Assembly: GCF_000143415.4 (NCBI RefSeq)
Contig: NW_003314308.1
Coordinates: 496,001 to 560,000, forward strand
DNA length: 64,000 nt
From: Selaginella moellendorffii
Lineage: Eukaryota; Plantae; Lycopodiophyta
Direction: 5' to 3'
Position numbers and translations under genes: made by a program. Position 1 is the stretch's first letter. Each line of letters begins with the position of its first letter. A model generated the notes under the pieces. It worked only from the letters and a program-made list of their open reading frames with translations. It had not been told where the DNA came from and made no database searches. Positions 8,224 through 60,746 of this stretch are shown here, in pieces.

Positions 8224-8249
8224 AAGTGACGGCCGAATATTCCCCAAAA

Positions 8250-35702: not shown

Positions 35703-35871
35703 GGCTAAAAAGAATTTGCTATTTGCTTAGAACAAAAAGATTCTAAGTCAGTCAGTCTATAGACTATGTTTCCATGTGTTTCGGAAACACACATGCTTCT
35801 TTCCTAGCCTGTGTGATGCATATGCTGACTGCATCAAGATGAATTCTAATCAAAGCTTTACCTCGTTGAGG

Positions 35872-38063: not shown

Positions 38064-38216
38064 AGCGAGCGCGCAGCGAGAAATCTATACAAACTACCTC
38101 TCGATCGCTACTACTACGATCTCGTAAGAACCCTAGGTACATCCGCCCAAACGGTCCCAAAGTTTTTTAAACTTCCAACGGTCACTGGCCCAAACATGAC
38201 CCATTCGTACAGAGAA

Positions 38217-40034: not shown

Positions 40035-40142
40035 TGGTTTGAAGAGTCCATAAGGAGAAGTCAAAAAAAGGTCAAATAGGAATTAGGGTTCTTGAGGATC
40101 TATAAGGACTGTGAGAGATTAGGGTTTTTGTATCGAGGAGGA

Positions 40143-40736: not shown

Positions 40737-40771
40737 TTGAAACTTTCAATATAGAGTAGTGGATCAAGGCT

Positions 40772-42127
40772 CTAGAGATAGAGAAGCTCCTTTAGACGAG
40801 CGCGGGAAACCTCCATGGCCTCCATGGCCTTGGATTTGATTACCTTTGCTCGTTTTCTCAGCGATTCACTGCCCATCAAACTCCTGGCGGCTCGCTCGAC
40901 TTCGCTCCTTCCAACAATCCTGGAGCTTCCATCGCTGCTGTTCTTGCTCTCGATCCTCACCCCGACTCTCCACACGTCCACCATGAACTTACAGTTGATG
41001 GGCTGGTCGCCCATGAACGGCCACCCGATCATCGGGACCCCGGAGCTCAAGCTCTCGAGCGTCGAGTTCCAGCCGCAGTGCGTGACAAATCCTCCCACGC
41101 TCGGGTGCCTGAGAATATCAATCTGCGAGCTCCATGACACGATCAACCCCCGGTTTCCAATCCTCGTCCGCAAGCCCTGGAGGAAATACCCGAGCTTTCG
41201 CTGGGAGCTCTCACGTAGGACCCAGAGAAAGCTCTGGTGACTTGCCTCCAAGCCATAGCCGACCTCCATGACTTGTTCTTCCGGGAGCTCCACCATTGTT
41301 CCAAAGCACACGTACAACACGGACGAAACCTCTTGTGCGTCGAGCCATTCTTTTTGGACGTGATCTTCCATGCTTGATACCGCCCCGACGAGCATTGGCC
41401 CAACGTTGACAAGCTTGCCAAACCCCTGGTCCCTCAAATCACCCAAAGTTTGCTCCTCCAACTCGTCCAGAGTATTCATGATCAGCCATGGAGCCTTGAG
41501 CAGGTTCTTGAGCTTTCTCATCGAGCTAAAGCTCACTGGATCCAGAGGGTCCTCGGGGATGTCCGTGAAAACCGAGAGCTCGCAAGGAACGCCTGGTATC
41601 ACGGACGAATCCACCACTTTCTTCTCGGGCGATCGATCGTTCCTGGAGAGCGGAAGGAATCCTTTCTCCAGGAGCGTCTCGACGTTGACAGTGATGTGGA
41701 GCATGGCCGCCGACGACACCCAAAACGCAGCAACGTTGCAAGCTAAGCTCTCGAGACGGTCGATAAGCAGGAAGTCGATGATGGCCAGGGAAACCGGCCC
41801 GAGCTCTGGAGCAGAAGCCGCGACCAGCTTCTTAATCTCGTCCGAGTTCCTGGCCATGACCTCGATGCTCTCAGAGAGCGTATAGCCGCTGCGATCTCTA
41901 TCGACTTCCAGAGCCTGGAATCTAATGGCTTGCCTCAATTTTTGGTCGCCGTCGCAGAGATGGTTGAGGGCCGAGAGTGATGCTTGGAGAGTGCTGCTCG
42001 TTGTGATGAATGTGATATCGGATCCAAGGGACGCTAGCTGCACAGAGAGCTGGAGCAACGGATTAGTGTGGCCAGAGATTGGAAGAGGAATCACCACAAC
42101 ATGAGGCGGATTGCTTCGGGACGCCAT
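40772..42127 (-). CDS. UDP-glycosyltransferase (family 1), intronless
   Basis: GHTNP; PSPG box WSSQIDILRHPSVGGFVTHCGWNSTLESLSSGVPMIGWPFMGDQ. Confidence 0.95.
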   Translation of the reverse strand: MASRSNPPHVVVIPLPISGHTNPLLQLSVQLASLGSDITFITTSSTLQASLSALNHLCDGDQKLRQAIRFQALEVDRDRSGYTLSESIEVMARNSDEIKKLVAASAPELGPVSLAIIDFLLIDRLESLACNVAAFWVSSAAMLHITVNVETLLEKGFLPLSRNDRSPEKKVVDSSVIPGVPCELSVFTDIPEDPLDPVSFSSMRKLKNLLKAPWLIMNTLDELEEQTLGDLRDQGFGKLVNVGPMLVGAVSSMEDHVQKEWLDAQEVSSVLYVCFGTMVELPEEQVMEVGYGLEASHQSFLWVLRESSQRKLGYFLQGLRTRIGNRGLIVSWSSQIDILRHPSVGGFVTHCGWNSTLESLSSGVPMIGWPFMGDQPINCKFMVDVWRVGVRIESKNSSDGSSRIVGRSEVERAARSLMGSESLRKRAKVIKSKAMEAMEVSRARLKELLYL

Positions 42128-42354
42128 AGCTGACAAGCTCTCTCGGCTTGAGACTTATACAAGAGAAGATTCTCAAAGTTATGCGTTAGGTAAGTTGATG
42201 ACACCCCAACCGTCTAGCCGAGCGAATCTCGATCACATATGGAGACGTGGCACCCACAAGACGGGTGGGAGCGCGCCCGCAACGAGGACGCCACCAACGC
42301 GACAAAGATAATCCAACTTGCAAGAACTCGCTTACTCCATTTTGATACTTTTAT

Positions 42355-43815
42355 TTTAGAGCTCTAAGTAAAACTGTGTGGAGGGGCGCCACCATCGCAG
42401 CAGAGAAAGATTTGGAGTTTGTGCGCTACAAGGATTTGCCACTGGAGCCTCCGGCGAGAGGAGCTTGTCGACTTCTCCCCAAAGCTTAAGGCGCTGGGCG
42501 GTGCCGTGACGGCGCTCTGGTGGCACCGCCGGGTGACGTGCGTCATCACGACGTTCTTGTGGGCTGGGACGGAGAAGTCGCTTGGGTGTGCCGAGGGTCG
42601 TGTTTTGGACGTCCACCATGACCGAGTGCCGTGTATAGTAACTTATCGGAGCTCGGACTTTGCCAGTACGCGATCAGCTTGGGCTCTATGCCACAGTCTC
42701 GAGAATAACCTTGCCGCGGAAGTTTGGATCTGTGGCATGAAGTAGCGTCGTGAAGTCCAAGGCCTTGAGGTCCGGAAGTCCTGGAATCTTCACCGTGGTT
42801 CCGAAGTTATCTTCACCATGGTTCCGAGATCTAGCAATCCAAGTTATCTTCACCGTGGTTCCGAGATCTAGCAATCCAAGTTTTCTAAGATCACAAAGAA
42901 AAAGTTTGGAATTCGCGTACCTTTGATCGCATTCTCGGAGATGACTCCCTGGAAGGCAATGCGGTGAGAGCTCTTGAGCTATGAGGAATCAAAATCGGTC
43001 CTCTCTATCTGAACATCTCCACCGGGGACGACGATCCAGACGATCCAAACCAGGTATTCCATGGCTGACAAACAGGAGCCTCGATCGGTTCTCTATATTC
43101 CAGTCCCGGCAGTCGAATTCAAGCAGATAGCCCTGGAGGATGCATTCGCAGGCTCTTTCTGGCAACCGCGGGGAAGTAGGGAAATGTCGCCCTCGCTCAC
43201 CAGAGCGCTGCCGGCAGGGATCACTTCGTCCAATTCCCTCTGGTCTTTTGCCAAGATAAGAGCGTCCAGCCCCGGACTCACGTAGGAGCAAGAACAAAAG
43301 AGAGCAAACCGGTCAACACTCTAGTCAACACATAAGTTAACGCCCAGACTTACCAGCATGGTTCCGGCATGTTCTCGAGCGAGAGCAGGAAGCTCTGGCT
43401 TTGTTCTTGCTTGGCCATGGAAGATCGGTGCACGTCCATGTGCGCTTGGAGCAAGGCGTGCACACTGTCCTCAGCTTGGGCAGCGAGAGATCCATTTGAT
43501 CCATGGGAAGCAATCGCCGATGTGGAGGCCCTCGCTGAGCTTATTCGCGCTGGATCAAGCGGATGAAATCGTCCACATCGAAGCTTCGGCTCGTCCCAAA
43601 CACGAGCACTTGCATGATCCCGAGGACAGTCAGCTCCTGGCTCATGTTCACTGACATGCTCGTCCAAGTTCCTGGCCATGATCTCGATGACGCTGCGGTT
43701 TCTATCAACTTCCAGAGCCTAAAATCTAATGGCTTGCTTTGGTCGCCATGAGGGCCAAGAGTGAGTGATGACCATAGCTGACTTTACAACAAGAGAATAT
43801 TCTTAAACTTATGCG
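42355..43815. pseudogene. Scrambled mosaic of UGT and P450 fragments
   Basis: Pieces match UGT 44524 (both orientations), P450 exons 1-2 (about 43180-43670) and the 5' end of UGT 42127. Confidence 0.85.
42804..42877. repeat. 37-bp tandem duplication
   Basis: aagttatcttcaccRtggttccgagatctagcaatcc x2. Confidence 0.9.
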
Positions 43816-44523
43816 TAAGCATGAGGACCAAAATGTCTCCCGGTGCTGCTGTTGGTGTGTGTGTGTCTACTGCTCCTCAACTAACTCTCCCCGTGTTCAC
43901 CCAACTCCCAATGTGAAGTGAATCTTAACATATGAAGACATATAATCTTAACAACTCACAACACACTTGAAACTTTACATTCATGCTTCAAAGTTAGGCA
44001 TCGCAAAACCATAAACAACATATATAGATAAAATGTTTGAGAGACCATTAAGTGATAAGTATTACAAGAGAAGCATAGCTTGGGGTGTGTAAATTATGAA
44101 GCATGAAATAGCTTTGAGCTTGAAGGTTGTGTGGAGCGTATCAGAAAATTCATAAACTATGTGTTGTAACAAAAAAAATGTATTATTAAGTTTATGAGCA
44201 TATCATAGCATATTTCTTGGTCACCTACTCTTTATGATCCTTTTCTTTTGCTGAGTTCATCACACTTTTTCCAGAGCTCTAAGTAGAACTTCAAATCATA
44301 GTGGTCAATTCGTTGTGTTTTCAAGAAAGAATCAAGAGTAAAGAAAGAAAGTAAACAACAGTCACTAGAATTCGTGGGCTTGCTAGTTTACTGCCACGTA
44401 TGAGAGCATTTGAGCGAACAACGAGTGACACGACGGACAAATAAAAGACAAGGAGGAACGAGCTCAGCTATGCTGGAGCAGAAAACCATTAGAAAAGGAA
44501 AACTTTGAATTCTTCTCGGAGCT

Positions 44524-45980
44524 ATGGAGGAAGAACACTTGGATCACATACACATTCTCGCAGTGCCATTCTTCCTCAAGGGCCATGAGATCCCTCTCCT
44601 CCATCTCTGTCGCCATCTCCACTCTCTCACTGGCGGCCGGATCGCCGTCACGATCCTCCAGCTCCCGCAAAACAAGTCGCCACTCTCTGGAGGGGCGCCA
44701 CGATCGCAGCCAGAGAAAGGTTTGGAGTTTGTGCGCTACGAGAATTTGCCGCTGGAGCCTCCGGCTGAGAGGAGCTTGCAGCTCTTCCTCGACTTCTTCC
44801 CAAAGTTTAAGGCGTTGGGCGGTGCGGTGTCGGCGCTCTGGCGGCACCGCCGGGTGACGTGCGTCATCACCGACGTTCTCGTGGGCTGGGGCGGAGAAGT
44901 TGCCCGTGACTTGGGCGTGCCATGGGTCGCGTTTTGGACGTCCACCGTGACCGAGCTTACCGTGTATAGTAACTTACCAAGGCTCATCTCTGAGAATGCG
45001 ATCAAAGGTACGTGAACGCTAAACCTTTTCTTTGTGATCTTAGAAATGGATTGCTAGATCTCGAAACCACGGTGAAGATTCCAGGACTTCCGGACCTCAA
45101 GGCCTTGGACTACACGACGCTACACCATGCCACAGATCCAAACTTCCGCGGCAAGGTTATTCTCGAGACCTTTGTGGAAGCCGTACGGTATAGCACCCAA
45201 GCTGATCGGGTACTGGCAAACTCCTCCCACGCCCTGGAAGGCAATGCGGTGAGAGCTCTCGAGCTATGTGGAATCAACATCGTTCCAGTGGGTCCTCTCC
45301 ATCTAAACATCTCCACCGGGGGCGATCCAAACGATCCAAACCAGGTGATTCCATGGCTGGACAAACAGGAGCCTCGATCGGTGCTCTACATTGCGTTTGG
45401 AACGGTCGCTCCAGTCCCGGCAGCCCAATTCGAGCAGATAGCCCTGGCTCTGGAATCTACTAAGAACATCGCTTTCCTATGGGTGGTACGCCCGGAGCAG
45501 CTCAAGCTAGTGCCGAAGGAATTCGGCTGTACCGCGCGGTACGCGTTCAAGTCTGGTGATACCGTTAATGGCGGGACGGTATACCGCGGGCTGCTAACCG
45601 ACTGGGCACCCCAGGTTGCGGTCCTCGGGCACCGTGCAGTGGGCGGTTTCTTGACGCATTGTGGATGGAATTCGATCTTGGAGAGCATCACTGTTGGCGT
45701 TCCTGTCATCTCGATGCCTCGAATGGCCGATCAGTGCTTGACGCGCAAGATCTTGGACGAGGAGTGGGGGGTTTCGGTACGATTGGGTAACACGGTTACT
45801 GACGTTGTGAGCAAGACCGATTTGGAGGCTGCGATCGAGGAGCTCATGTTTGAAAGGCGGGATGAGCTTGGAAAGAAAGCGAGCGATCTTGGAGAACTCG
45901 CTAGACAGGGCATGGAAGAAGGAGGATCTTCTCGATCCGGCATCGATTCCTTGGTCAAAGACCTTTTACTGTGGAAGTAA
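44524..45980 (+). CDS. UDP-glycosyltransferase (family 1), one very short intron near 45008-45043
   Basis: PFFLKGHEIP; PSPG WAPQVAVLGHRAVGGFLTHCGWNSILESITVGVPVISMPRMADQ. Confidence 0.93.
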
Positions 45981-46032
45981 ACGCTAGTAAAAATTTTCTT
46001 TATTGAAATTTCTTTATTGGTATTTGAAATTT

Positions 46033-46521
46033 CTAGAAGTGGAGTACGCGTAGATCGAAGGAGAACGTGGAATTGATGTCCTCCACGATTCGATCGACGA
46101 GAGCGTAGCCTTTGGCAAACAAAAACTCGCCAGTGCCAGTAGCGATTGGGAGCTGACCACTGGAATTCGTGACGGCGCTGAGAAACGTGAGGCTACTGCC
46201 CTGGAATTCGTCTAGAGTGAGCGTCACAGACACCAGAGATGTGAGGCTATCCATCGACACCACCGTGCTCGTCCCTCGAATCCTTCCTACTTCGCGGGAG
46301 TCGCTCGATCGGCTCACAGTCACGGGATCATCCACGACCGCGATGGCTCCGAATGGATTCGCCGGGTTTCCCAGGCTGGGAACTCCAGTGGTGACGAGGA
46401 AATCGGTGACATTGAAGAAGTCCTGCCAAAAAAGCCTCTGGTGAAGGGATCTCGCGCTGGAAATCTGGAGAGCGACAAGCGCGATGGCCGAGAGGAAGAG
46501 TAATTTGTTAACGCTAGCCAT
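46033..46521 (-). CDS. Dirigent protein (secreted)
   Basis: Signal peptide MASVNKLLFLSAIALVAL; FGAIAVVDDPVT, VGRIRG, LPIATGTGEFLFAKGYA. Confidence 0.88.
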   Translation of the reverse strand: MASVNKLLFLSAIALVALQISSARSLHQRLFWQDFFNVTDFLVTTGVPSLGNPANPFGAIAVVDDPVTVSRSSDSREVGRIRGTSTVVSMDSLTSLVSVTLTLDEFQGSSLTFLSAVTNSSGQLPIATGTGEFLFAKGYALVDRIVEDINSTFSFDLRVLHF

Positions 46522-47003
46522 TATGGAGAAATTTTCAAGGAGAAACGAAGTTTTAAACCAAAAGTTTGGTGCCAACCAACCAAAGATCTAGTGCCGTGTT
46601 GAGAACAACTATAGAAAAATCTACTTGGTTCTTCCTAGAAGTTCTTCCAAGAAGTTCTTCCATAGAATCTATTGTCCAGTCAATTGCGAAGACAAAATAA
46701 TCAACGAACTAGAAGTTCTTCCCAGAAGTTACCAGGAGTCAAGAAAACTATGACCCTCCAGTCAAGAAAAGTCAATCGTAGTCAACGAGAAAGTTGGCAC
46801 GGTAGCCAAGGAGAACATAAATTTAAAGGCTGCCACGCACCAATTTGAAGAAACGGTGGGAGTATCTACACGTCCACAAACATCCATAATGGAACTTCTG
46901 GCACTGTGCTTTTTCAGATCCGCCGTGATCCCCGTGACACAGTTTTCTCGCATATAAGTTCATCCATTTAGTCTATCAAGCATTGTCTTGCAAGTCTAGA
47001 GCA

Positions 47004-48314
47004 ATGGTGGACGATCAGCAAGNNNNNNNNNNNNNNNNNNNNNNNNNNNNNNNNNNNNNNNNNNNNNNNNNNNNNNNNNNNNNNNNNNNNNNNNNNNNNN
47101 NNNNNNNNNNNNNNNNNNNNNNCCCGGTAACGTGCGTCATCTGCGACGTGCTCGTGGAGTGGGGCGAGCGCGTCGCGCGGCACCTGGGCGTTCCATGGAT
47201 CGCGTTCTGGACGTCCACCGTTTTGGAGATGGCGATGGCTTCCCACGTTCCACGGCTCATCGCGGAGAATGCAATAAAAGGTGAGTGAACGAACCAAAAG
47301 GAGAGGAAGCTCACTGTGTTTTGCATAGATCCCGAGAGCATCATCAAGATTCCAGGCCTGCCGGATTTCCAAGTCCGCGACTACGTCACTCTGTCCAACG
47401 TGATCAATCCGAACTTCCCCATGAAGTTCATGATCGAGTCTCTCGTTGATACCGTGCGGCGTACCGCCGGGGCCGACATGATCCTCGCTAATTCCTCCGG
47501 CCTGCTAGAGGACGACGCTATCAAAACGCTGGAGAGCTCCGGGATCAAAGTCACTCCAGTCGGTCCCTTACACCTGATCGATCAAGACAACGATCCCAAA
47601 GATCCAGACAAGGTAATCTCGTGGCTGGACGAGCAAGATCCAGCCTCGGTTCTCTACATTTGTTTTGGAACGGTGGCTCCAATGCCGGTGGGTCAGATGG
47701 AAGAGCTCGCAATGGCTCTTGATTCCACCGGAGTATCCTTTCTTTGGGTGGTGAGACACGACCACTTGAAGGACATACCGCCGGGATTCACCGCCAAGCA
47801 CGGCATTTCCAACGGTACCAACGGTACAAATGGCGGTACCAACGGTACAAATGGCGGTACCAACGGGTGTACCGCGCGGCACCGCGGGCTGCTAACCGAC
47901 TGGGTGACCCAGCCGCGCGTCCTTGGGCACCGTGCCGTGGGCGGCTTCCTCACGCACTGCGGCTGGAACTCTGTGATGGAGAGCATCACTGCGGGCGTCC
48001 CGATGATCACGCGGCCGCTCATGGGCGATCAAACGCTGACAGCCGCGATGCTCAGGCAGGCATCCATGCCCGCGATCGCGCTCCCGACATCAAAGGGCGG
48101 TGCCGTGACCAAGACGGAGATTGTGGCAGCGATCGAGGAGCTCATGGTGAGAGAGAGAGGCGCGGAGCTCCGGCGCCGTGCGGGTGATGCTGCGGCGCTC
48201 GTTCGCAGTGGGATGGAGAACGGCGGGTGCTCGCGGCGGTGCCTGGATTCTCTCGTCACTGAGCTCAACATTCTCGCCAAGAACCCTAAAATTCAGCATA
48301 TTCGGTTTGCCTAG
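47004..48314 (+). CDS. UDP-glycosyltransferase (family 1), spans the assembly gap, one intron
   Basis: Paralogue of 44524; PSPG WVTQPRVLGHRAVGGFLTHCGWNSVMESITAGVPMITRPLMGDQ. Confidence 0.9.
47023..47122. other. Assembly gap (100 N)
   Basis: Run of N; the paralogue suggests about 0.3 kb of exon 1 is missing. Confidence 0.99.
47810..47866 (+). repeat. Coding minisatellite encoding NGT/NGG repeats
   Basis: caacggtac / aaatggcggtac units. Confidence 0.85.
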
Positions 48315-48446
48315 ATTCGCCCTCTATTTCAGTCAATAAAATTTGTGAAATTTGTGACGAAACTCTAGGCAAAGAATGTCATAAGATGACGTCCTCTATT
48401 TCACAGCGCCTGGCTTAGAAAATTTTCAGTATAATGATATTTTGAA

Positions 48447-48716
48447 GTGTGAAATGTACAAATTCTGATCCACCATCTGATACGCAATAAAATCATTGAT
48501 ATGCTTACCTAGAGGAGTCGCTTTTCAAAATCCATCAATGCTTTCCATCTCGTTCTTGCCAATCTTCTAAACAACTTGAACCCTGTCACATTTACCACCA
48601 CTCGAAGTTCTACAGAGGATTGGCAAGAATTAGAACTGATGGATTTTGAAATCAAGTAAACATATCAATGGAAGACGGATTTTATTGCGTATTAGAGATT
48701 TGAGTACATTTCACGC
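48447..48716. repeat. Long imperfect inverted repeat (hairpin; candidate small-RNA precursor)
   Basis: Five complementary blocks around a loop at about 48578-48604. Confidence 0.8.
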
Positions 48717-48832
48717 CACACAATATAGTGAGTTGGCAGTAGGTCACGAACGTATCCATTCTTCCATTTTCATAATATCGGTGCCCAGAAATGGCGCGCA
48801 GGCTTAACAAAGCAAGAGCAACCTTTAATAAG

Positions 48833-50405
48833 TCAATATGTTTCATTACTTGCGGAGAAGTGGAACCAATGCAAGTGGACGAGCACGCATGAGCGTGAAC
48901 CCGACTCTCCCACGTCCACCTCTTTACCATCCGGTGTTGTCCAGTTGAACCTGTAGAGAAGATTGGCAAGAACGAGATGAACAGCAGCCAACCCCAAGTT
49001 CATCCCCGGGCAGGATCGCCGGCCAAAGCCAAACGTCATAAGTTCTACGGCCGCATTGAATTCGCTGCTCATGCTCTCTGGGATGAACTCCAGAGGGTTC
49101 TCCCAGATGTTTGGATCCCGGGCGATGGCGTAGAGGTTGATCAACACTTGGGTCTTGGCTGGGATCGTGTAGCCAGCTTCTTCAAGCTTTCATACACGTT
49201 GATAACAAATTCAGAGATCTAGCGAGGATCAAACCTTTTAGACTACTTACCTTACAGTCGGTAGTGGATTCGCGTGGAACCATGAGTGGCGCCGGAGGGT
49301 GCTTGCGCAGGGTCTCCTTGACAATCGCGCCGAGGTACTTGAGCTTGGGAATGTCGGCCTCGCTCACCATGGCGCTACTAGCAGGGATCACGTCGTCCAA
49401 TTCCTTCTGAGCTTTTGCCAAGATTTGTGGATGAAGAAGTAGCTCTGCGAGAGCCCATTCTATCGCTGTGGCAGTCGTGTCCAGCCCTGCACTCACAGCA
49501 TCCTAGCAAGGACGGCCAACGAGTTAGTCAACACTCAAGTCAACCCCCAGTCTTACCAGCATGAGGCACCGGATGGTAAGATCTGACATGTTGTCGAGCG
49601 AGAGCAAGACGTCCAGGAAGCTCTCGCCGCCATGTCCTTGCTTGGCTATAGAGGATCGGTGCTCTTCAATGTGTGCTTGAAGCAAGGCATGGAATTTGGT
49701 TGCTAAGGTTCTCAGCTTGGGCAGCGAGAGATCCATCCATTTAAGCCATGGGATGTAATCGCCGATGTGTAGCCTCCCTCCCAGCTCGTTCGCCTGGTGG
49801 GCCAAGCGGAGGAAATCGTTGGCACCGAAGGTCCGGCTCGTCCCAAACACGAGCGTTTGCATGATCTCCAAGGTGAGGACGCTGAGCTCCTGGGTCATGT
49901 TCACCGTTCTTCTCAGATTCTGGGAGAGCATCGCCAGGAACTTCTCCATCTCCGCTTGCCTCACTGCCGCAAAGCTCCCCACGCGGCGCGCGGTGAAGAG
50001 CTCGAGCGTGCAGATCTTGCGGAGCTCCCTCCATCTCGCGCCATAGCGCGCGAAGATGAGATCGTCTGGGAGGATCGCCTCGGCAAACGTGAGCGATGGC
50101 CGCGAGGAGAAGATCCTGTCGTGTGTCTTGAGGATCTCTTGGGCGATCTTGGCTGAGGAGATGACGAGCGTGGGGGTGTAGCCCAGGCGGAGGTAGAAGA
50201 TCGGGCCGAGCTTCTTGGCGAGATCGAAGAGGATGAGATGCGGCCCGCGGGAATTGCTGGCCAGGAGTGGAATGTGGCCGAGGATTGGAAAGGCCCGGGG
50301 GCTTGGAGGCATGACATGGGAGCTGCGTGATTTAGATCGATCATAGTAGAAGATCACCAAGATGAAAGAAGCCAAGAAGGTGAAAAAAGCTGTGATGTGC
50401 TCCAT
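48833..50405 (-). CDS. Cytochrome P450 (CYP71 clan), copy 1, with a late frameshift (possible pseudogene)
   Basis: PPSP hinge, [20 protein letters not shown]; PER becomes PES; a 4-nt deletion near 48907 alters the C-terminus. Confidence 0.85.
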
Positions 50406-50574
50406 GGAAGTTTGGAAATGTAGTGTGTCCTTATAAACACTTCAAATGGTGAATGACGCATGGAAACTTCGGAAGCCTTTGGCTGAGAAACAACCTTTCT
50501 AGAAAATAAAGATGTTATTTTTGTCTTATTTCAATATGAGCAATAACCTTTCTAAAAACCAAGATTACAACACA

Positions 50575-53230
50575 TTATTCTATTCCAATTGGGGATATTT
50601 GTTAAATTAAGGTTTCTATTTATCATTGGTCACCAAAGCAAATTAAAATTTTATATACAAACATCAAAGAGATGTTAAACAAGGGTGTTATTTGAAAGTT
50701 ATGAAGTTTTTAGGCATGTGAACCTTATTTTATAACAAAACTTGATAGGAATATTTATTCATTAAACAAAGTGATTATTTAGATATGCACCTTTTTCCTC
50801 ACATTTTTTATCTCTTAGATCATCTAGGAAGAAGTTGTTAACTCACCAAACTAGATCTTGCTTCTAAGTATTGGCAAGTGCTGATGACCAAAAAGGATAT
50901 TCCTAAAACTATTTTTCATACACTATTTAGTTTATATAAATTATTGATGATGCCATTCGGTTTAACTAACACTTTAGTAACTTTTTAATAGATGATGGAT
51001 GCGGTTCTTTACAATATGCTAAAAGTGACTACTGACTTCATTGATATATGACAATTCATTTGAAGAGGACATAGGAGGAGTATGTTTATGATGTTAGGAA
51101 AGTGTTGAATCGGTTATAAGAAGTTGGTTTAAAATTAAAGTGGTCGAAATGCATGTTTAAAGACATAGTTTATCTTGAGTATTATATTTCTTGTGAGGGT
51201 TTACAAGTTGATCTTAACAAACTTGTGGCCATTCAAAATGTTCCTACTTCGAAATGTGTGAATAACATGTAGTGTTTCTTGAGCAAGGTGCAATATCTTA
51301 GTTGTTTTGTTAATCATCTTTTTAATCACATTGCACTATTGCAAGCATTACTAAAGTCATTAACATCATCTTTTATCTAGTTTGAGGACTATGAACAAGC
51401 ATTTTAAGAGCTATTAACAACTCCTCTAATTCTGGCATATCCTAACTACATTTGACTTTTCATTTTGCATGTGAATGTTTTGGATATCGGTTTTGAGGGT
51501 GTCTTAATGCAAAAAAATACAAGTGTAATTGGTAAGTATCATCTTATTATGTACATTAATTGTACATTACAACTAGTAAAGGTGAACTACTTCACAACGA
51601 AAAAAGAATGTTTAATAATAGTTTAGAGTTTTGAAAGCTTTTATACATATTTGCACAGTTCTTGAACATTATTAGAAGGTGATCATGCTATAGTTACTTT
51701 GTTATTGAAGTAGAAGAACTTGGTTGGTCATACTAGTCGGTAGGTTTTGGAGCTTTAAATATACAATTTAAAGGTTGTTCATTGCCTAAAGAGTTCTATA
51801 GTTAATATTGATGCCCTTTCTCAAATTCCTGGTGAGCTTATTATTCTAGCACCTATGGATTTTCTAGATAAGGATTTTGTGTTATCAATAGTTGATGTAC
51901 TTGATATTTAGTGTCCACAAGGTGCAAAATAAAATTTATCTTCACTTGACAATGTTTGTGAGGTTCAAAAGGTTGAGTTATGGATCCAAAAGCTTTGTGA
52001 GGGGTTTAAGAATCCTACATCATTTATTAATGACTTGCCGTTTTAACATTTACATTCTCAATATCACCTTAATGACAACTTTATTTATTGTTGGGATTCA
52101 TCTTGATGATCATTTACAACTAGTTGTACTTATGATATTTATTTTATGCCTTTTCCATATTATAATGACTCTTTTATTCTATGTGGGTATATGGGATATC
52201 AGTGTATGATTGAAAAGGTACAAAAGTCTTTCTATTAATCGGAGATGCAATATGATGTTATTTGATATATGTGCAATTGTGTTTGGTGCCAAGTCCATAA
52301 TACTTTCCTTCGTGTTACGGAAGGATGGTTGGAGTCAATTACAATTTTATTTCCATAGCATTTGATCTAATGGGGTCTTTTCCACAATTAATTACTGATA
52401 ATGAATATGTCATTATTGCCTTTGACTACTTGATTCACTTGGTATTCTGTTTAAAGCAAATTCTCTCAAGTAATGGTTTTGCATTTATGACTAAAGCATT
52501 TCATGTTTTAATATCTTAATTAGGGATACACTACACTTTTACAAGTGTGTATTATCCACAGATAAATGGTTTAGTGGAATGGCTCATTTGGACTTTCAAA
52601 GGAATGATTGTGAAGTATATAAGCTTTCAACATTCGAATTAAGATGGTTATTTATTATCTATTCGGTATATATATGTCACAAGGGTGCAAAGTTCTATTA
52701 GTGCTTCACCATATAGAAGTTTATATGATGTAATAAAAGATACTATGATCTAATATTACTAACAAAGTTGAGTTTACCTTCGCAATTGTTATGAGCTGCC
52801 GATGCTAATACTAATATTTGATGAATATTTTTACACTTTTTTAAGCAGAGTCTACTAAACATTTGAGCTACGTACAAGTGGGACAACAATAGCACTACAA
52901 CTCCCATCATCATCCACCTCCAGAGTACAAAGTGAATGATTTAGTATTAGTCCATTTTCCTAGTCTTATCATAAATGGTATATTTAAATGGCTCCTTGCT
53001 CAGTAAAAGGGACTATATTAGGTGTTGTGGCAAGTTGAACCATAAGTTTATGAAGTTCAACATGATGTTCAACCTTTCACATATAATAGCCAACACCTTA
53101 TCTAAATCAAAGAATATAAATACCACAAATGTATGCTATGCTCCCCAAAGAAAATTACAAAATGATTAGGATACTATGAGACTAAGGTAACTATATTCCT
53201 CACCTATGTGGGGGAAGTTTGGGGTGTTAG
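50575..53230 (+). mobile_element. Decayed Ty3/gypsy pol remnant (RT-RNaseH-integrase)
   Basis: LDLASKYWQV, MPFGLTN, RNaseH NYFTTKKECL, integrase YYPQINGLVE, in RT-RH-INT order; many stops and AT-shifted. Confidence 0.8.
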
Positions 53231-54725
53231 TATCTCCACTACAAACTAGAAGAAGTTTAAGAAAATCAATCACCAATTCTTGAATATGGAATTTGGTTAT
53301 TAAAAAATAAACTGGTGTTATGGTTGTAGAGATATAAATTACTTTAAGTAACTCATATTTTTACCAAGTGATTCCTCTTTATTGATGTTTGAAATCATAG
53401 ACAAACTCTTTAAATATGCTATCTCCAACTCTACTGATACAAACAGCATAGGATGGTGCACAAATTTAGATGTTGGACATAACAAGACTAAATATAGATT
53501 TGGACGATTTGCTTTATATTGCATATATAGGTTTTCCAAAGGTAGCTCAATTAAACTTAAATTTTAAGAATACCTTGATATTTTCAATTCACAATACCTT
53601 ATCAGTATAATACATTATTAGAGTGCCAAAAAACAATACCATGGGTAGATAGTATTTTGCAATATTGTGGCAAGTTATTGAGCAAGTTAACATTCCCTTC
53701 ACACAAACATTCTTGCCATTCAAAGAGAGATTCTACTTCTTTTGTAGGCATAGTTTGAGATGGTATACCATTTCATTCTCATATGTAAGACATTCAACCA
53801 TCTACGAACTAGTAACAATTCTCTAGATTTGACATTATACTTTCACAAATTTCTCTTATAATTGCATCACATTCATTTGGTTGAATTCTTTTTGGCTGCT
53901 ATAGATTTACAAGAGTGATATTGATATAATTTATAATTTATAATTTTTTTAAAGCTTAAAATTTTTAATTTTAAAGTTTCTATATAAATTATAGTGATAT
54001 ATAATACTAAAAACTTTATATGATGATAGGACTCAATGTTCCACTTAAAGATGTGTATTATGTAGCTATTATGGTAACAATATCTCAATCATATTTATAC
54101 AATATTATTTTTATGTATTAAAAAAATACTTCATAAAAAATATTAATATAAAAATAAAGTGTTAGAAATTTGTAATATTGAAAAAAATTAAAATAAAGTA
54201 AATATCTGAGCTAACTTAAAATCAATATGATTAATTTCATTGATGACTTTATTATAAAATGGAATAACTAAAGCCATTCAACTCCTTTATATTAGGTTTT
54301 AGAGGATCCTCTATATATTATGTCACTACTTCACTTTTATCTTACTTGAAAGTATTTTTTATACTCCTGCCATTTGTATAAATATGTGTAAATTTAATAA
54401 TTACTATCCAAATAATTAAGTATTATTTCCTACACATACTTTAAATTATCATATTAATTTCAATATTTTGGAACTTTCACTTCAATAATTTTAACTCTAA
54501 ATTCATCTCATATAAAATTTATCTTTTCAGTAACTATAACTAATATAATTGTTTTAGCTCCAAGTTTCATTTATTCAGATATTTATCCATAATATTTAAT
54601 TGTCCAAGTTTACTATAATTAATCATATACAGGATCAAATTTAAATATGTAATCTCTATTTTTTTACTGGTTAACAAACCCAATCATGGATTTCCGACCA
54701 ACACATAACACGTGGAAGTGTTGAA

Positions 54726-54787
54726 ATGGAGTCTGAGATGGACCTAAGATAGAGTTTAAGATGGAGTCTAAGATGGAGTCTGAGATA
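54726..54787 (+). repeat. 11-bp tandem repeat (gatggagtctr)
   Basis: About 5 imperfect units. Confidence 0.7.
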
Positions 54788-56949
54788 ACCATAATTATAC
54801 CTATTCCTTTACTACTAATCCTCATTTAAATTTGCCAACACTTAAACAACTCATTTAACCATAAGATCCTATAGCTAGCATTTTCATCTCAGTAGAAGAT
54901 TCAAAACTTCATTTGGCATTCCAAGTTTTAAATGTTATATTATGTTATAAGTTATATTTATTATGTTCTAATGTGTATAGGGTCAATTGTAAAAGGGATT
55001 TTTATATAAATATTATATTATGTTATATTAACTATGTATATTATAATTATAATTATGTTAAAAATTATTAAAAAATTTGAAATTACTAAAACTCCTGGCA
55101 TATCTATGACTTTTGCTAGTCCTTCTAAGCAAAGAAACATATTTAATCTACATACTTTCCAAGCTTAATGGTTGAGATAGGTGTATGTAAGGTGGTTGCT
55201 TTTTTTAGGGAAAGTTTTTCTTATCTCAGAGGAATTGGATTTGATTACTTTGTACTTATCGATTGTCCATAGTGAGAAGTAAACAATTCCATTCAACTCT
55301 TAAGTGTTTGTGATATAGGAATCATAGATGTGGTGACCCTTGTGCTAAGACACAACTAACTCTTCATTTATATCCTTTGGGGATGATTAGAAAGAAAAAA
55401 CTTGAAATAAGAGATGATGCTTCTGCTTCTAGTTTTCTAGGCATTTCCACTCTGTATAATCCTCATGTATGGTATAAGATGGTGATAATATGAATGTGGA
55501 TAATAGACTTATCATGCGAGCACCTCTTGTGTGTGGCAGACTTTCTCAAGCGAACTAGACTACTATGAGATACAAATAGGTTCATCAAGAGAATGTCATT
55601 CACTTCTTGGTTATACTTAGTGTCTGTAAAGTTCATGAGGACTTGGAGAGATGATCAAAAGGTGACAATAGATATCCTTAAGTGTGTGAAGCATGAGCAT
55701 ATGAGTTCCATGCTTTGTAGGAGCTTCATTATGCTAATACCACCTAATTTGAGTTTGACTTAGTGTTTTGCGCTAAATCAATTCAAACTATCTCTTTAGT
55801 TTCCCACATCTATTTCACACTGTTAACACAACTATTAACTGTTGTTAATTAATAAGAGTTTTGATAGGGTTAAACTAAAACATAAGATGGAATTGAGAGA
55901 TAAGAGACATGATGTTTGCCTATTTAGGTATTAAGCTTTTAAGCATAAAAGTGGCGAGAGGATGATGGATTGACAATGTATACAACCATGCAACACAAAC
56001 CCTCAAGTAAGCAACAATCAAAAGTCAAAGTAGCATAGTGTTAGATAAAATGCAAAACATCATAGATGAGTGGACAAAAACTTGTCAAGTGAAATGCAAT
56101 AAGGATGATGCTACTATCAATATTAAAATTGGTGATGGACCTCGAAAAATCAAGTACTTCAAAGGCATTTCTTTTATGTCATGAACTTTTTTGTTCCCTT
56201 AGAAACTGAAGAAAAAAAAAAGTGATGTTTGTTTCTTTGAAGATAAAAATGATAGTTCCAATGATGAATTTGTACGTAGAAGTGATTGACTAATGTTTTC
56301 TATGTTTGTGATGTGAATTGATGAAGATGTTGAGCATTGTAAAAATAATTATATGCAAGTAATTTCAGTCGATTTAAATCAGTTATGGCCATAGAAGACG
56401 TGTAGATATACACATGATAATGAGAACTAATGTTTCCTTGCTATACTCTTAACTATTATGGCCTTGGAAAAAACACATCTACATCCAGAGGTAGTCGACT
56501 ACGAATTGATATGGCTGATTTCACAAATAATGAAACTATCACTATGTGGATGTATCCCGCTGTACCAGCAATTTGCAAAAGAAAAGTGGTTGAAGATAAT
56601 TGGATTTGAAGTTGTCCTAGCAGTACTAAAGTATGATAGATGAACATGGAGATATGTGCTAAAAGTTTGTCACTCAACTGTCATTGAAGAAGTTAGTCTA
56701 GAACCTCTTATGTATCTTCTGTCACAAATTTTATCAAATTACACAAAGGACGTAATATGGTTGGGTCAATTGAAGCCGTTATGATTGATTTACTTGTCCT
56801 ACAACAGTGTTGAGATAATTGTTGTGGATAATTGTGGTTTAGATGGTATTGAAATAATTTGTCTCATTCACTATGTATTTTGACCTTATTACCACTGCAG
56901 ATTAGCATGTGAATGTCACAGGCATGACTATAAATTGAACCCAGAACAA

Positions 56950-57700
56950 TTTGATATTTAACAAAAGTGTACCAACAATGACATCACCTTTTCCATCTTG
57001 ATGCCCTTGAGATTGATAAGTTGCACTGCTCGATTGTCATGCATGTTTAGAGCATAACCCCATACCATGGTCATCCAGGAAACCAAGCTGCACATCTTCA
57101 TGCTCTCAAATTTTTTGTGGTTGTCCAAGTTGACATAAACTTGTGTGAACACTGTCCAGCAGACAATGGTCTTGCATGGGATCTAGTGAAAGAACCTCAT
57201 GGCCTCATCAAAATGCCCAATTTGCACTGCATTAGTGAAGGGAAGATGACGGAATGCCCAATTCTTCGAGGAATCCATTCTGAACGTAGCACAGTAGTAG
57301 ATTTGTCCATGACACGAGATCCTTGGCATTCGATCAAAGGTCGATTTCACTGCCTCGACTTGCCAAGTGTTGTGATAATTAGAGTTCCATGTCACGGCCT
57401 CAGAGACACCAGGCAGCAAGATAGCCTGGCAGTTGCGGATCCAGAATACCGCCACATATCCAATGAGCATCGAGATCTGCGAGACAAGATCGTGAAACAA
57501 CACCCAATTAAACGTGTTCTTGGCATACATGAGCGAGATCCAAGAGACCACATCATGATCCGGCATGGAATCAAAGATCTTCTTCAGATTGGAGCTCTAT
57601 ATGTCAGATTGCACAAATTCCACTGCACAGCGGCTCTTGGCAAATGTGATCACCAATGCATTGATCAAAGAAGAGTCACAAGGCGTAGGTATGGACCATC
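56950..57700 (-). pseudogene. Degenerate PPR fragments
   Basis: MPDHDVVSW, VKSTFDRMP, GHFDEAMRFF, broken across frames. Confidence 0.6.
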
Positions 57701-59182
57701 ATGTTCCAGGTCGCAGCATTGCGCTGGGAGATGCAATCGAAGAGCTTAGTAGCACTGGAGGTGTGCCCGACAGCGAGCGGCTGGTTCATATTTTCAAAGA
57801 AGCAACAGTCAAATGATTGTAGTAAGAGCTGAGGTACAGCACTGTATATTCGTGTTTTATTTTTAAAGAGAAGTTAATAGCAGAAACTTCCAACTTTCGA
57901 GAAAGCATGGTAGAGAATGTCACTTTTTGAGATATACTTCTGGAGAATCCCTGTTTTTCAAGGCAAGAATCCACCATTCTCTCTTCATTTTAAGTCTAGC
58001 ATGACTGAGTAATGACTGCTAAAATTTATGTGGAAAACTTTAGAACACAGAAGTTACAAGTTGGTCTTTCATTGAGAATGAGCATGTGCTCTAGTTTTTT
58101 GATAGGATGCTGTTGGTTGGACAACAAGGACTTATGATATTGTTCTATTGGTTCTTTGGATGAGCAATGCATCAAGGTTCAAGTGTGAAAGTTTTCAATC
58201 AGGTCTGAGCCAGTAGGTAGAGTCTCTTGAGGAAATTGTTAAGGAATGTTACAATCAGAAGTCAAAATTTCCTATAGATTTGGAAATGGAACCTCTGACC
58301 TCTTTGTCATCAGAGCTCCAGTTTTTCAAGCCTTCTGCCAATCCTCTTGATTGATGTCTCATCAATCCAACACGCAGCTTTGGCAGCCACAATTATGTCC
58401 AGAGAATTGTTGCTCCTGCCTGTGTCATGAGTCCCTTCAATTCCATGTCTCTGCAATTGAGGCACTTGCAAGCTTGCTCAGTCCTTGATTAAAAATCCAT
58501 CAATATGACCAAAGCAATACTTGTCTTTCTATTCTGAGCAGAAATGCAAAAGTTAATCCTAAGGACTTAACTATTGCCAAAGCATTATTGAGTTGATGAT
58601 GTTATATGGGATCACTACTAAGGAAATTTAGAATTGGACAAAGCAGTAAAGTGTAAAAATGTGAGCCATTTCCTTGTAATGGTTTACCTCTTGACAAACT
58701 AATTTGTCTTTAGACTCTTAAAGAGAAATTCACATAAGAGCTATAAGAAGTTAGTGTAAGCAAAGCAGGACGGGAAATAGTAATGGTAATAAAAGAAGGA
58801 ACTTGGTGCATTGTTCTTTTTTTAAATAAATTTGCAACCATGAACAGTTTGAAATCCAAAAAACATCTTTGAAGACTTAATTTTGTGTAGGCCAGCATAG
58901 CTGGATTCATTGCTAGTATATTCTAAATATATCCATTCATTTACAGGTTGTTTGACATGTTGGAGCCCAAAAATGGGCCTAGTATCCAAACAAAGCTTGT
59001 AACAGATTAGAGAGAGGAAGAAATCAAGATCTTTGCCCTGGTAGATCTTTTGAGATAATTGCCTGAGAACTGAACGGAAGCCCATTGGACCAGGATCATG
59101 GCAGATTGGGAGCTTCCAATCTAACCTTCGCACAAAGCAAAATTAATAAACACACTCTGTTTATTCTAGTCAATATGTTTGA

Positions 59183-60746
59183 CTACTTGCGGAGAACTGG
59201 AACCAATGCAAGTGGACGAGCCCGCATGAGCGTGAACCCGACCCCCTCGCCCACGTCCACCTCTTTACCATCCGGTGTTGTCCAGTTGAACCTGTAGAGA
59301 AGATTGGCAAGAACGAGATGAACAGCAGTCAACCCCAAGTTCATCCCCGGGCAGGATCGCCGGCCAAAGCCAAACGTCATGAGTTCCACGGCCGCATTGA
59401 ATTCGCTGCTCATCCTCTCCGGGATGAACTCCAGAGGGTTCTCCCAGATTTTTGGATCCCGGGCGATGGCGTAGAGGTTGATCAACACTTGGGTCTTGGC
59501 TGGGATCATTGAGCCAGCTTCTTCAAGCTTTCATACACGTTGATAACAAATTCAGAGATCTAGCGAGGATCAAACCTTTTAGACTACTTACCTTACACTC
59601 GGCAGTGGATTCGCGTGGAACCATGAGTGGCGCCGGAGGGTGCTTGCGCAGGGTCTCCTTGACAATCGCGCCGAGGTACTTGAGCTTGGGAATGTCGGCC
59701 TCGCTCACCATGGTGCTACTAGCAGGGATCACGTCGTCCAATTCCTTCTGGGCTTTTGCAAAGATTTGTGGATGAAGAAGTAGCTCCGTGAGAGCCCATC
59801 CTATCGCTGTGGCAGTCGTGTCCAGCCCTGCACTCACAGCATCCTAGCAAGAGCGGCCAGCGAGTTAGTCAACACTCAAGTCAACCCCCAGTCTTACCAG
59901 CATGAGGCACCGGATGGTAAGATCTGACATGTTGTCGAGCGAGAGCAAGACGTCCAGGAAGCTCTCGCCGCCATGTCCTTGCTTGGCTATAGAGGATCGG
60001 TGCTCTTCAATGTGTGCTTGAAGCAAGGCATGGAATTTGGTTGCTAAGGTTCTCAGCTTGGGCAGCGAGAGATCCATCCATTTAAGCCATGGGACGTAAT
60101 CGCCGATGTGTAGCCTCCCTCCCAGCTCGTTCGCCTGGTGGACCAAGCGGACGAAATCGTTGGCACCGAAGGTCCGGCTCGTCCCAAACACGAGCGTTTG
60201 CATGATCTCCAAGGTGAGGACGGTGACCTCCTGGGTTATGTTCACCGTTCTTCCCAGATTCTGGGAGAGCATCGCCAGGAACTTCTCCATCTCCACTTGC
60301 CTCACTGCCGCAAAGCTCCCCACGCGGCGCGCGGTGAAGAGCTCGAGCGTGCAGATCTTGCGGAGCTCCCTCCATCTCGCGCCATAGCGCGCGAAGATGA
60401 GATCGTCTGGGAGGATCGCCTCGGCAAACGTGAGCGATGGCCGCGAGGAGAAGGTCCTGTCGTGGGACTTGAGGATCTCTTGGGCGATCTTGGCTGAGGA
60501 GATGACGAGCGTGGGGGTGTAGCCCAGGCGGAGGTAGAAGATCGGGCCGAGCTTCTTGGCGAGATCGAAGAGGATGAGATGCGGCCCGCGGGAATTGCTG
60601 GCCAGGAGTGGAATGTGGCCGAGGATTGGAAAGGCCCGGGGGCTTGGAGGCATGACATGGGAGCTGCGTGATTTAGATCGATCATAGTAGAAGATCACCA
60701 AGAAGAAAGAAGCCAAGAAGGCGAAAAAAGCTGTGATGTGCTCCAT
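59183..60746 (-). CDS. Cytochrome P450 (CYP71 clan), copy 2, apparently intact, 3 exons
   Basis: N-terminal [29 protein letters not shown], normal PLALVPVLRK end. Confidence 0.92.

What the first reader, a model, noticed from the sequence alone, without database searches (positions are those of the whole stretch)
40772..60746. Candidate biosynthetic gene cluster: 3 UGTs + dirigent + 2 P450s
Seen: three different enzyme families typical of specialised metabolism lie within 20 kb with no intact housekeeping gene between them, and the dirigent and one UGT share a 480-bp divergent promoter. Known: dirigents steer phenoxy-radical coupling (lignans/neolignans), CYP71-clan P450s oxidise such scaffolds, and family-1 UGTs glycosylate them. 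Inference: a phenolic-coupling (neo)lignan-glycoside cluster in a probable lycophyte, a group where such clusters are little described.
Basis: partly seen in the sequence, partly recalled or inferred. Interest (0 to 1): 0.75.

Follow-up and report, generated by a model that had tools for sequence, protein, structure and literature searches.

The report
Spikemoss UGT–dirigent–P450 gene neighbourhood
Three sugar-transferase genes, one dirigent gene and a row of P450 genes do lie side by side in the spikemoss Selaginella moellendorffii, but the P450s appear silent where the others are active, so a shared lignan pathway is unsupported.

Summary
The window is Selaginella moellendorffii scaffold GL377612.1. 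It carries UGT1, UGT2, a secreted dirigent, UGT3 and two CYP792A (CYP71-clan) P450s. No intact unrelated gene lies between them. The start codons of the dirigent and UGT3 are 482 bp apart.

The assembly gap sits in exon 1 of UGT3. The other haplotype and transcript contigs both put 289 nt there, not 100, and the frame is kept.

The lignan-cluster reading is not supported:
- The dirigent has no relative above 44% identity. It resembles pterocarpan/isoflavene-type dirigents more than pinoresinol-forming ones.
- UGT2, the dirigent and UGT3 are transcribed in four independent transcriptomes. The CYP792A genes give no contig in three of them and one weak contig in the fourth.
- CYP792A1 has a 4-nt deletion that rewrites its C-terminus. 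The other haplotype's dirigent has a 1-nt deletion.
- The P450s belong to a four-copy tandem array.
- Pseudogene debris and a paralogous locus show block duplication followed by loss of the dirigent and UGT1.

This is most likely a duplication-built neighbourhood. At most it holds a dirigent–UGT module.

The parts
40772..42127 (-). UGT1. Single-exon family-1 UDP-glycosyltransferase of 451 aa (P0238), which RefSeq names 'UGT74E2'-like. It is only 26-27% identical to UGT2 and UGT3.
   Evidence: Pfam UDPGT E 2e-28. It matches the database protein exactly. The catalytic His and the PSPG box are visible in the alignments. Its expression was not tested.
42374..43745 (.). Pseudogene debris. It holds a UGT2-like fragment (+, 42374-43135, with an inverted piece at 42692-42799), a CYP792A fragment (-, 43183-43654) and a UGT1-like fragment (-, 43659-43745).
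   Evidence: tblastn; repeats D5, D8, I1 and I3. The same debris is present in the other haplotype.
44524..45980 (+). UGT2 (XP_024541983.1, 468 aa). Exons 44524-45007 and 45058-45980, with a 50-nt GT..AG intron.
   Evidence: Pfam UDPGT; 100% and 99% tblastn matches over the two exons to P0237. Spliced contigs are seen in runs X4 and X9, unspliced ones in X1 and X3.
46033..46521 (-). Dirigent gene, 162 aa (P0096). It has a signal peptide and three N-X-S/T sites. Its 3' end converges on UGT2, with the stop codons 52 nt apart.
   Evidence: Pfam Dirigent E 1e-23. The AlphaFold2 model has pLDDT 92.7. The best fold matches are GePTS1, PsPTS1 and PsPTS2 at TM 0.76-0.79. RNA contigs cover it in all 4 runs.
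46522..47003 (.). 482-bp divergent intergenic region between the start codons of the dirigent and UGT3.
   Evidence: Sequence. Contigs reach 46591 on the dirigent side and start at 46997 on the UGT3 side, with no coverage at 46680-46879.
47004..48314 (+). UGT3. Exon 1 is 47004-47280 and is interrupted by the assembly gap 47023-47122, whose true length is about 289 nt. The intron is 47281-47328 and exon 2 is 47329-48314. UGT3 is 52% identical to UGT2. It contains a coding 21-nt repeat at 47813-47866.
   Evidence: Pfam UDPGT. The other-haplotype orthologue P0241 is 469 aa and intact. Transcript contigs bridge the gap and the intron. Tandem repeat.
48833..50405 (-). P450-A = CYP792A1 (EFJ17875). 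It has three exons. A 4-nt deletion near 48905 replaces the last ~22 residues. It is probably a pseudogene or an impaired allele.
   Evidence: Pfam p450; name. It is the only one of six compared copies with the deletion. No RNA contigs in X1, X4 and X9; one 261-nt contig with 6 mismatches in X3.
59183..60746 (-). P450-B, a CYP792A paralogue (XP_024541820.1, 481 aa, intact). Exons 60746-59898, 59843-59592 and 59527-59183. It is 97.3% identical to P450-A across the gene span, introns included.
   Evidence: The exon model reproduces the RefSeq protein exactly. Identity. Heme-binding, I-helix and ExxR motifs are visible in the translations.
50406..59182 (.). AT-rich spacer (GC 28-39%) between the P450 copies. 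It holds decayed repeats and a PPR gene fragment (57198-57566, -). No intact gene is present.
   Evidence: Composition; ORFs. The upstream blocks are repeated at 61.7-62.7 kb. The PPR fragment appears in a RefSeq mis-model.

Best explanation
This is a real, already annotated gene neighbourhood in Selaginella moellendorffii that was built by repeated local block and tandem duplication followed by decay. It contains three family-1 UGTs of two deep lineages, one highly divergent secreted dirigent, and the first two members of a four-copy CYP792A (CYP71-clan) tandem array.

Shown here:
- The genes and their order.
- Continuity of UGT3 across the assembly gap.
- Transcription of UGT2, the dirigent and UGT3.
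- The same gene order in both haplotypes.

Inferred: the genes do not form one co-regulated three-family pathway. The P450 array behaves as a separate unit that is largely silent, and the copy nearest the UGTs is damaged. Joint transcription of the dirigent with its two flanking UGTs probably reflects the shared 482-bp promoter region and open chromatin. It need not indicate a common product. By family, the dirigent would bind and orient a phenolic quinone-methide intermediate in the cell wall, and the UGTs would glycosylate small phenolics in the cytosol. Nothing here ties them to the same compound or to lignans.
For: - Identity and order of the genes.
- Block duplication. The debris at 42.4-43.7 kb holds fragments of the same three gene kinds. 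The paralogous locus L003 repeats the order UGT1 (-) / UGT2-like (+) / dirigent (-), but only the UGT survives. The P450 copies are 95.5-98.4% identical and spaced about 10-11 kb apart, with two more beyond the window.
- Expression. Spliced RNA contigs cover UGT2, the dirigent and UGT3 in four studies. P450-A has none in three runs and one weak contig in the fourth. Any of the seven CYP792A copies compared would have been laid at the 95% threshold.
- Damage. CYP792A1 carries a 4-nt deletion that is unique among six copies. The other haplotype's dirigent carries a 1-nt deletion.
- Dirigent type. No relative exceeds 44% identity among 1.84 billion representatives, and the nearest Selaginella paralogue is 39% identical. 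It is closer to pterocarpan/isoflavene-type dirigents than to AtDIR6 or DRR206.
- Literature. No paper on CYP792 or on this cluster was found.
Against: - Three enzyme families in about 36 kb with no unrelated intact gene between them is unusual. It would meet rule-based cluster definitions.
- The dirigent and UGT3 share a short divergent promoter, and both are expressed together with UGT2 in all four runs.
- The order is kept in both haplotypes.
- The dirigent coding region is 99% identical between haplotypes, against 96.7% for the flanks. This hints at constraint.
- The expression data are assembled contigs from runs that were chosen for holding UGT2 and the dirigent. They can show presence but cannot prove that the P450s are absent.
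- Inducible P450 expression (stress, specific tissue) was not tested.
Confidence: 0.5

Rival explanations
1. A smaller dirigent-UGT module. The secreted dirigent controls coupling or cyclisation of a phenolic quinone-methide intermediate. UGT3, and perhaps UGT2, glycosylates the substrate or the product. The genes are co-regulated through the shared divergent promoter. The CYP792A array is an unrelated neighbour.
For: - The start codons are 482 bp apart and face away from each other.
- All three genes are covered by RNA contigs in four independent studies.
- The order UGT2 / dirigent / UGT3 is kept in both haplotypes.
- The order UGT1 / UGT2 / dirigent predates a block duplication.
- The dirigent barrel is intact, with a confident model.
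Against: - In the duplicated block the dirigent decayed while the UGT survived.
- The other haplotype's dirigent allele is frameshifted in the assembly.
- The nearly invariant His of the FYxHD motif is Gln here, and GePTS1 Arg145 has no counterpart.
- Co-occurrence in four transcriptomes is not correlation.
- Dirigents act in the wall and UGTs in the cytosol.
Confidence: 0.3
2. One reading: a full biosynthetic gene cluster. The dirigent sets the coupling of monolignol-type radicals, the CYP792A P450s oxidise the scaffold and the UGTs glycosylate it. The products would be (neo)lignan glycosides, and the P450s would be switched on only under conditions not sampled here.
For: - Three specialised-metabolism families are contiguous.
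- Lignan and neolignan glycosides are reported from Selaginella (PMC3650682).
- P450-B and the other-haplotype copy are intact.
- A UGT(+)/P450(-) convergent pair occurs twice, once intact and once as debris.
Against: - P450 contigs are absent in three of the four transcriptomes that express the other genes.
- CYP792A1 is frameshifted.
- The dirigent is not DIR-a-like.
- A CYP792A paralogue on another scaffold has no UGT or dirigent among the genes called within 10 kb.
- No substrate evidence exists.
Confidence: 0.12
3. An assembly artefact: the gap or a haplotype mis-join created a false adjacency.
For: A 100-N gap lies inside UGT3. The reference assembly holds both haplotypes as separate scaffolds.
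Against: - The second haplotype scaffold is colinear over 12.5 kb at 96.7% identity and runs through the gap position.
- Transcript contigs bridge the gap with the same 289 nt.
Confidence: 0.02

Closest known systems
Rule-defined candidate plant biosynthetic gene clusters (plantiSMASH type)
   Same: At least three enzyme types of specialised metabolism are contiguous, and one of them is a dirigent. plantiSMASH 2.0 has been run on S. moellendorffii and reports clusters there with no similarity to known ones (10.1101/2025.10.28.683968).
   Different: There is no demonstrated common product. The P450s are not co-expressed in the data at hand. One P450 and one dirigent allele are damaged. Much of the content is tandem copies. 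I could not check whether this locus is in the plantiSMASH list.
Pinoresinol-forming dirigent proteins (DIR-a: AtDIR6, DRR206)
   Same: Pfam PF03018 domain, a secreted glycoprotein-like precursor and an eight-stranded barrel.
   Different: The matches are weaker than to the DIR-b/d structures: phmmer E 3e-4 and 3e-9 against 5e-13, and TM 0.69 and 0.60-0.62 against 0.76-0.79. The conserved His of the FYxHD motif is Gln. No orthologue was found outside this species.
Pterocarpan and isoflavene synthase dirigents (GePTS1, PsPTS1, PsPTS2; DIR-b/d)
   Same: These are the best sequence and fold matches. The omega-loop Thr and Ser, and the Asp of the FHD triad, are kept.
   Different: Identity is only 24-27%. 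GePTS1 Asn137 and Arg145 have no counterpart in the alignment. I know of no isoflavonoid pathway in Selaginella (own knowledge).
Tandem arrays of lineage-specific P450s and UGTs in S. moellendorffii
   Same: There are four CYP792A copies in about 28 kb. According to a phylogenomic study cited in PMC8839085, Selaginella UGTs cluster apart from those of seed plants.
   Different: Here two arrays and a dirigent are interleaved.

Membership tests
Plant biosynthetic gene cluster (functional sense) | Three or more non-homologous specialised-metabolism gene types physically linked | tested here: met
   UGT, dirigent and P450 lie within 20 kb (36 kb with the whole P450 array), with no intact unrelated gene between them.
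Plant biosynthetic gene cluster (functional sense) | Co-expression of the member genes | tested here: inconclusive
   UGT2, the dirigent and UGT3 are covered in 4 of 4 RNA data sets. The CYP792A genes are absent in 3 of 4. Contigs cannot prove absence. UGT1 and inducing conditions were not tested.
Plant biosynthetic gene cluster (functional sense) | The gene products act in one pathway | not testable with these tools
   This needs enzyme assays or genetics.
Plant biosynthetic gene cluster (functional sense) | Linkage conserved beyond one genome | tested here: inconclusive
   The order is conserved between the two haplotypes. Protein searches with the dirigent, the P450 exon and the UGT2 exon found no close orthologue in any other species, so synteny could not be examined.
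Dirigent family (Pfam PF03018) | Dirigent domain and beta-barrel fold | tested here: met
   Pfam E 1e-23; model pLDDT 92.7; TM 0.76-0.79 to the solved dirigents GePTS1, PsPTS1 and PsPTS2.
DIR-a (lignan-forming) subfamily | Closer to DIR-a members than to other subfamilies | tested here: not met
   phmmer E values are AtDIR6 3e-4 and DRR206 3e-9, against GePTS1 5e-13. The fold ranking is the same. No labelled phylogeny was built.
Family-1 UGT (GT1, PSPG) | UDPGT domain, PSPG box, N-terminal catalytic His | tested here: met
   Pfam. The PSPG motif and the His are visible in all three genes. In UGT3 the His lies in the gap and was seen in the other haplotype's protein.
CYP71 clan / CYP792A | P450 domain with a heme-binding Cys motif, and best matches among CYP71-clan enzymes | tested here: met
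   Pfam p450. The motif [10 protein letters not shown] is present. The best solved matches are CYP76AH-type, isoflavone synthase and C4H. UniProt names CYP792A1, A4, A5, A8 and A9.

The most novel reading that the evidence does not exclude
The divergent, species-restricted dirigent and its two flanking UGTs, with the CYP792A genes joining only under induction, make a lycophyte-specific coupled-phenolic glycoside. That would be an independently evolved dirigent-centred gene cluster outside seed plants. The hairpin next to CYP792A1 could add small-RNA control of the P450 array.
Probability: 0.12. Interest if true: 0.7.

Novelty: new member of a known kind. Interest (0 to 1): 0.3.

Why it matters
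Dirigent functions are unknown for more than 95% of the family (PMC7450108). Functionally proven gene clusters are, to my knowledge, lacking in lycophytes. A proven dirigent-UGT(-P450) cluster would therefore be a useful entry point into Selaginella phenolic chemistry. The present evidence makes this a candidate of modest priority: the genes are ordinary members of large families, the region is shaped by duplication, and the P450 part looks disconnected. The practical gains are the resolution of the assembly gap, two corrected gene models, and a short, clear list of tests.

Tried and rejected
- The word-index search with the dirigent found only the protein itself. I therefore ran the exhaustive representative search.
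- Look-ups of the older EFJ protein models and of one XP model (P0002, P0003, P0231, P0392) found no recorded gene. The context of the nearest dirigent paralogue was therefore not examined.
- The expression-atlas preprint (10.1101/744326) has no text on gene clusters, dirigents or tandem genes. Searches for CYP792 gave only false hits.
- The bacterial-type promoter scan of the divergent region is not meaningful for a plant and was ignored.
- No formal chance estimate of the co-localisation was made, because no whole-genome gene table was at hand.
UGT1, P450-B and the hairpin's small RNAs therefore remain untested.
Exons were searched by reference, and full-length comparisons used database proteins (P0237, P0241, P0222, P0002). 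The exon joins were checked only locally against those proteins.
- The assembly-artefact explanation was rejected.
Full report
**Source of the window.** The dirigent protein encoded here is on record only on Selaginella moellendorffii scaffold GL377612.1 (assembly GCA_000143415.2). The fetched locus L004 is 100% identical to the window. From the coordinates, the window is GL377612.1:496001-560000 in forward orientation.

**What is there.** ORF lists and Pfam scans combined with database proteins give the following map.
- A PPR gene (38217-40064, -) and a dual-specificity phosphatase gene (about 40092-40736, +; Pfam DSPc is recorded for the annotated gene) lie just outside the finding.
- UGT1: 40772-42127 (-), single exon, 451 aa.
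- Pseudogene debris: 42374-43745.
- UGT2: 44524-45980 (+), with an intron at 45008-45057.
- Dirigent: 46033-46521 (-), 162 aa.
- UGT3: 47004-48314 (+), with an intron at 47281-47328 and the assembly gap in exon 1.
- P450-A: 48833-50405 (-), three exons.
- An AT-rich spacer.
- P450-B: 59183-60746 (-), three exons, exactly reproducing XP_024541820.1.

UniProt names the P450s as the CYP792A subfamily, and P450-A is CYP792A1. Their best solved relatives are CYP76AH-type enzymes, isoflavone synthase and cinnamate 4-hydroxylase. That pattern fits the CYP71 clan.

UGT1 is 26-27% identical to UGT2 and UGT3. UGT2 and UGT3 are 52% identical to each other. There are therefore two deep UGT lineages here, and none of the three is a recent copy of another.

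The start codons of the dirigent and UGT3 are 482 bp apart and point away from each other.

**The gap.** The gap (47023-47122) starts 19 nt after the UGT3 start codon. Three lines of evidence bear on it.
- Scaffold GL377619.1 (locus L002) is the second haplotype. It is colinear with window 34496-47022 at 96.7% identity and resumes at 47123. It has 289 nt where the window has 100 N, inside an intact annotated 469-aa UGT.
- A transcript contig from run X3 joins 47022 to 47123 with 289 letters between. Contigs from runs X1 and X4 also run upstream of 47123 into the gap region.
- The sum 19+289+158 = 466 nt equals 155 codons plus one base. That is the same intron phase as UGT2 exon 1, which is 484 nt.

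The two sides are therefore continuous and in frame, and the gap length is underestimated. The contigs' own letters are not given, so the reading frame through the gap rests on the other haplotype.

The gap has also misled annotation. XP_024541918.1 (345 aa) joins UGT3 to an exon of UGT2 across the dirigent.

**The dirigent.** It has a signal peptide and three N-X-S/T sites. Its AlphaFold2 model is confident, with pLDDT 92.7.
- An exhaustive HMMER search of 1.84 billion representatives found no relative above 44% identity. Only 19 proteins scored at or below E 1e-10, the query itself among them.
- The nearest Selaginella paralogue is 39% identical.
- By sequence it ranks GePTS1 (5e-13), PsPTS1, DRR206 (3e-9), PsPTS2 and AtDIR6 (3e-4).
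- By fold it gives TM 0.76-0.79 for the pterocarpan and isoflavene synthases, 0.69 for AtDIR6 and 0.60-0.62 for DRR206.
- Phe-His-Asp is said to be conserved in nearly all dirigents (PMC7450108). Here the triad reads Trp-Gln-Asp. GePTS1 Asn137 and Arg145 have no counterpart in the alignment.

The dirigent is therefore a real but divergent, lineage-restricted member of the family. It does not belong to the subfamily whose members have been shown to make lignans.

**Expression.** I laid the contigs of four runs from four different studies on 44480-50479. Their assemblies are transcriptome-sized, and the GT..AG introns are removed, so they are RNA.
- UGT2, the dirigent (contigs 45912-46591) and UGT3 (46997-48344) are covered in all four runs.
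- The intergenic stretch 46680-46879 is empty in all four.
- P450-A has no contig in X1, X4 or X9. In X3 it has one 261-nt low-depth contig with six mismatches.
- All CYP792A copies examined are 95.5-98.4% identical to P450-A. These are P450-B, the two copies beyond the window, the other haplotype's copy and a paralogue on GL377581.1. The 95% threshold would have laid transcripts of any of them.
- Caveats. The runs were chosen because they hold UGT2 and the dirigent. Contigs show presence, not absence. UGT1 and inducing conditions were not tested.

**Damage.**
- P450-A has a 4-nt deletion near 48905. It replaces the last ~22 residues, which follow the heme-binding motif, with unrelated sequence. 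None of the five other copies has it.
- In the other haplotype the dirigent is 99% identical but lacks one base, equivalent to window 46189. This shifts the frame at about codon 111 of the 162-residue protein, and the gene is not annotated there.
- No RNA contig shows that deletion. One contig shares two SNPs with that haplotype and yet lacks the deletion. The deletion may therefore be an assembly error or a rare allele.

**How the region arose.**
- The debris between UGT1 and UGT2 contains fragments of a UGT2-like gene (+), a CYP792A gene (-) and a UGT1-like gene (-). The other haplotype has the same debris.
- A convergent UGT(+)/P450(-) pair thus occurs twice, once intact (UGT3 with P450-A) and once as debris.
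- About 75 kb away on the other haplotype, locus L003 repeats the order UGT1-like (-), UGT2-like (+), dirigent-like (-). Only the UGT there (P0098, 81-88% identical to UGT2 over its two exons) is intact.
- The P450s form a four-copy tandem array. The two further copies lie at window-equivalent positions of about 70.5-72.0 and 75.0-76.5 kb. A PPR gene, an AlkB-like gene and an Mlo gene follow.
- A further CYP792A paralogue on GL377581.1 has no UGT or dirigent among the genes called within 10 kb.

The region is a hotspot of block and tandem duplication. In the one block copy that can be examined, the dirigent was not retained together with the UGT.

**Reading.**
- The physical cluster is real and would satisfy rule-based definitions. 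plantiSMASH 2.0 has been run on this species, but I could not see whether it lists this locus.
- The evidence does not support one three-family pathway and partly speaks against it. I rate a duplication-built neighbourhood without a shared pathway at 0.5.
- The strongest remaining functional link is between the dirigent and UGT3, with UGT2 possibly included. I rate a dirigent-UGT module at 0.3.
- I rate the full lignan-glycoside cluster at 0.12. Selaginella does contain lignan and neolignan glycosides (PMC3650682), but that is compatible with many loci.
- I found no paper on CYP792 or on this locus. Functional data on Selaginella UGTs are scarce (PMC8839085).

**Earlier notes of this scan.**
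- s1-433269 lists a cluster of the same composition on another piece of the genome. It is probably the GL377619.1 haplotype that I examined as L002, and it has not been followed up.
- s1-355708 reports another dirigent next to a CYP71-clan P450 in this genome, with no functional link shown.
- s1-395689 noted the hairpin beside P450-A. I confirmed that it folds strongly (-105 kcal/mol, z -9.6). It carries a 23-nt perfect match to the last exon of CYP792A copies A and B, to one copy beyond the window, and to the other haplotype's copy. Transcribed on the P450 strand, that arm would be antisense to the P450 mRNAs. No RNA contig covers the hairpin, and small RNAs were not examined.

**Limits.** There is no genome-wide chance estimate. 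There is no synteny outside this species. There is no quantitative expression and no substrate evidence.

Noticed in passing
window 48440-48725: A strong hairpin (-105 kcal/mol, z -9.6) lies just downstream of CYP792A1. One arm carries a 23-nt perfect match to the last exon of several CYP792A copies: A, B, one copy beyond the window and the other haplotype's copy. It could be a young hairpin or miRNA-like locus aimed at the P450 array. No long-RNA contig covers it.
   Followed up: partly
window 44713-45290 and 44481-45965: In runs X1 and X3 the assembled UGT2 transcript keeps the 50-nt intron, which brings an in-frame stop at 45013-45015. In runs X4 and X9 the intron is spliced out. This may be intron retention.
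   Followed up: no
window 47813-47866 and 48226: UGT3 has a coding 21-nt tandem repeat (Gly/Thr/Asn-rich). Exon 2 is 42 nt longer here than in the other haplotype, and one RNA contig (X4) lacks 12 nt at 48226. These are in-frame length polymorphisms.
   Followed up: partly
window 44854-48314 and 48836-57566: Two RefSeq models look wrong. XP_024541918.1 joins UGT3 to UGT2 exon 1 across the gap and the dirigent. XP_024541819.1 (580 aa) fuses a PPR fragment (57198-57566) to CYP792A1.
   Followed up: partly
window 45910-46035: UGT2 and the dirigent converge, with their stop codons 52 nt apart. RNA contigs of the two genes abut or overlap at 45910-45965, so the 3' ends probably overlap as natural antisense.
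   Followed up: no
L002 17309-20566 versus window 51309-55831: Beyond the P450, the other haplotype matches the window's AT-rich spacer in reverse orientation. Within the 21 kb fetched it shows one P450 copy where the window has two. This is a structural difference between the haplotypes.
   Followed up: no
L003 9163-11698 (GL377619.1, about 395-396 kb): A paralogous block has a decayed UGT1-like gene, an intact UGT2-like gene (P0098) and a decayed dirigent-like fragment, in the same order and on the same strands as in the window.
   Followed up: partly
L002 11642-11648 (equivalent to window 46189): The other haplotype's dirigent has a 1-nt deletion, yet its coding region is 99% identical to the window's. 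That is more conserved than the flanks, which are 96.7% identical.
   Followed up: partly
window 6355-8247, 23670-26657, 38217-40064: Several long PPR genes (one with an E motif) and a kinase gene (32841-34361) fill the first 40 kb. Two ORFs of about 430 aa without a Pfam match lie at 12587-13885 and 21611-22906.
   Followed up: no
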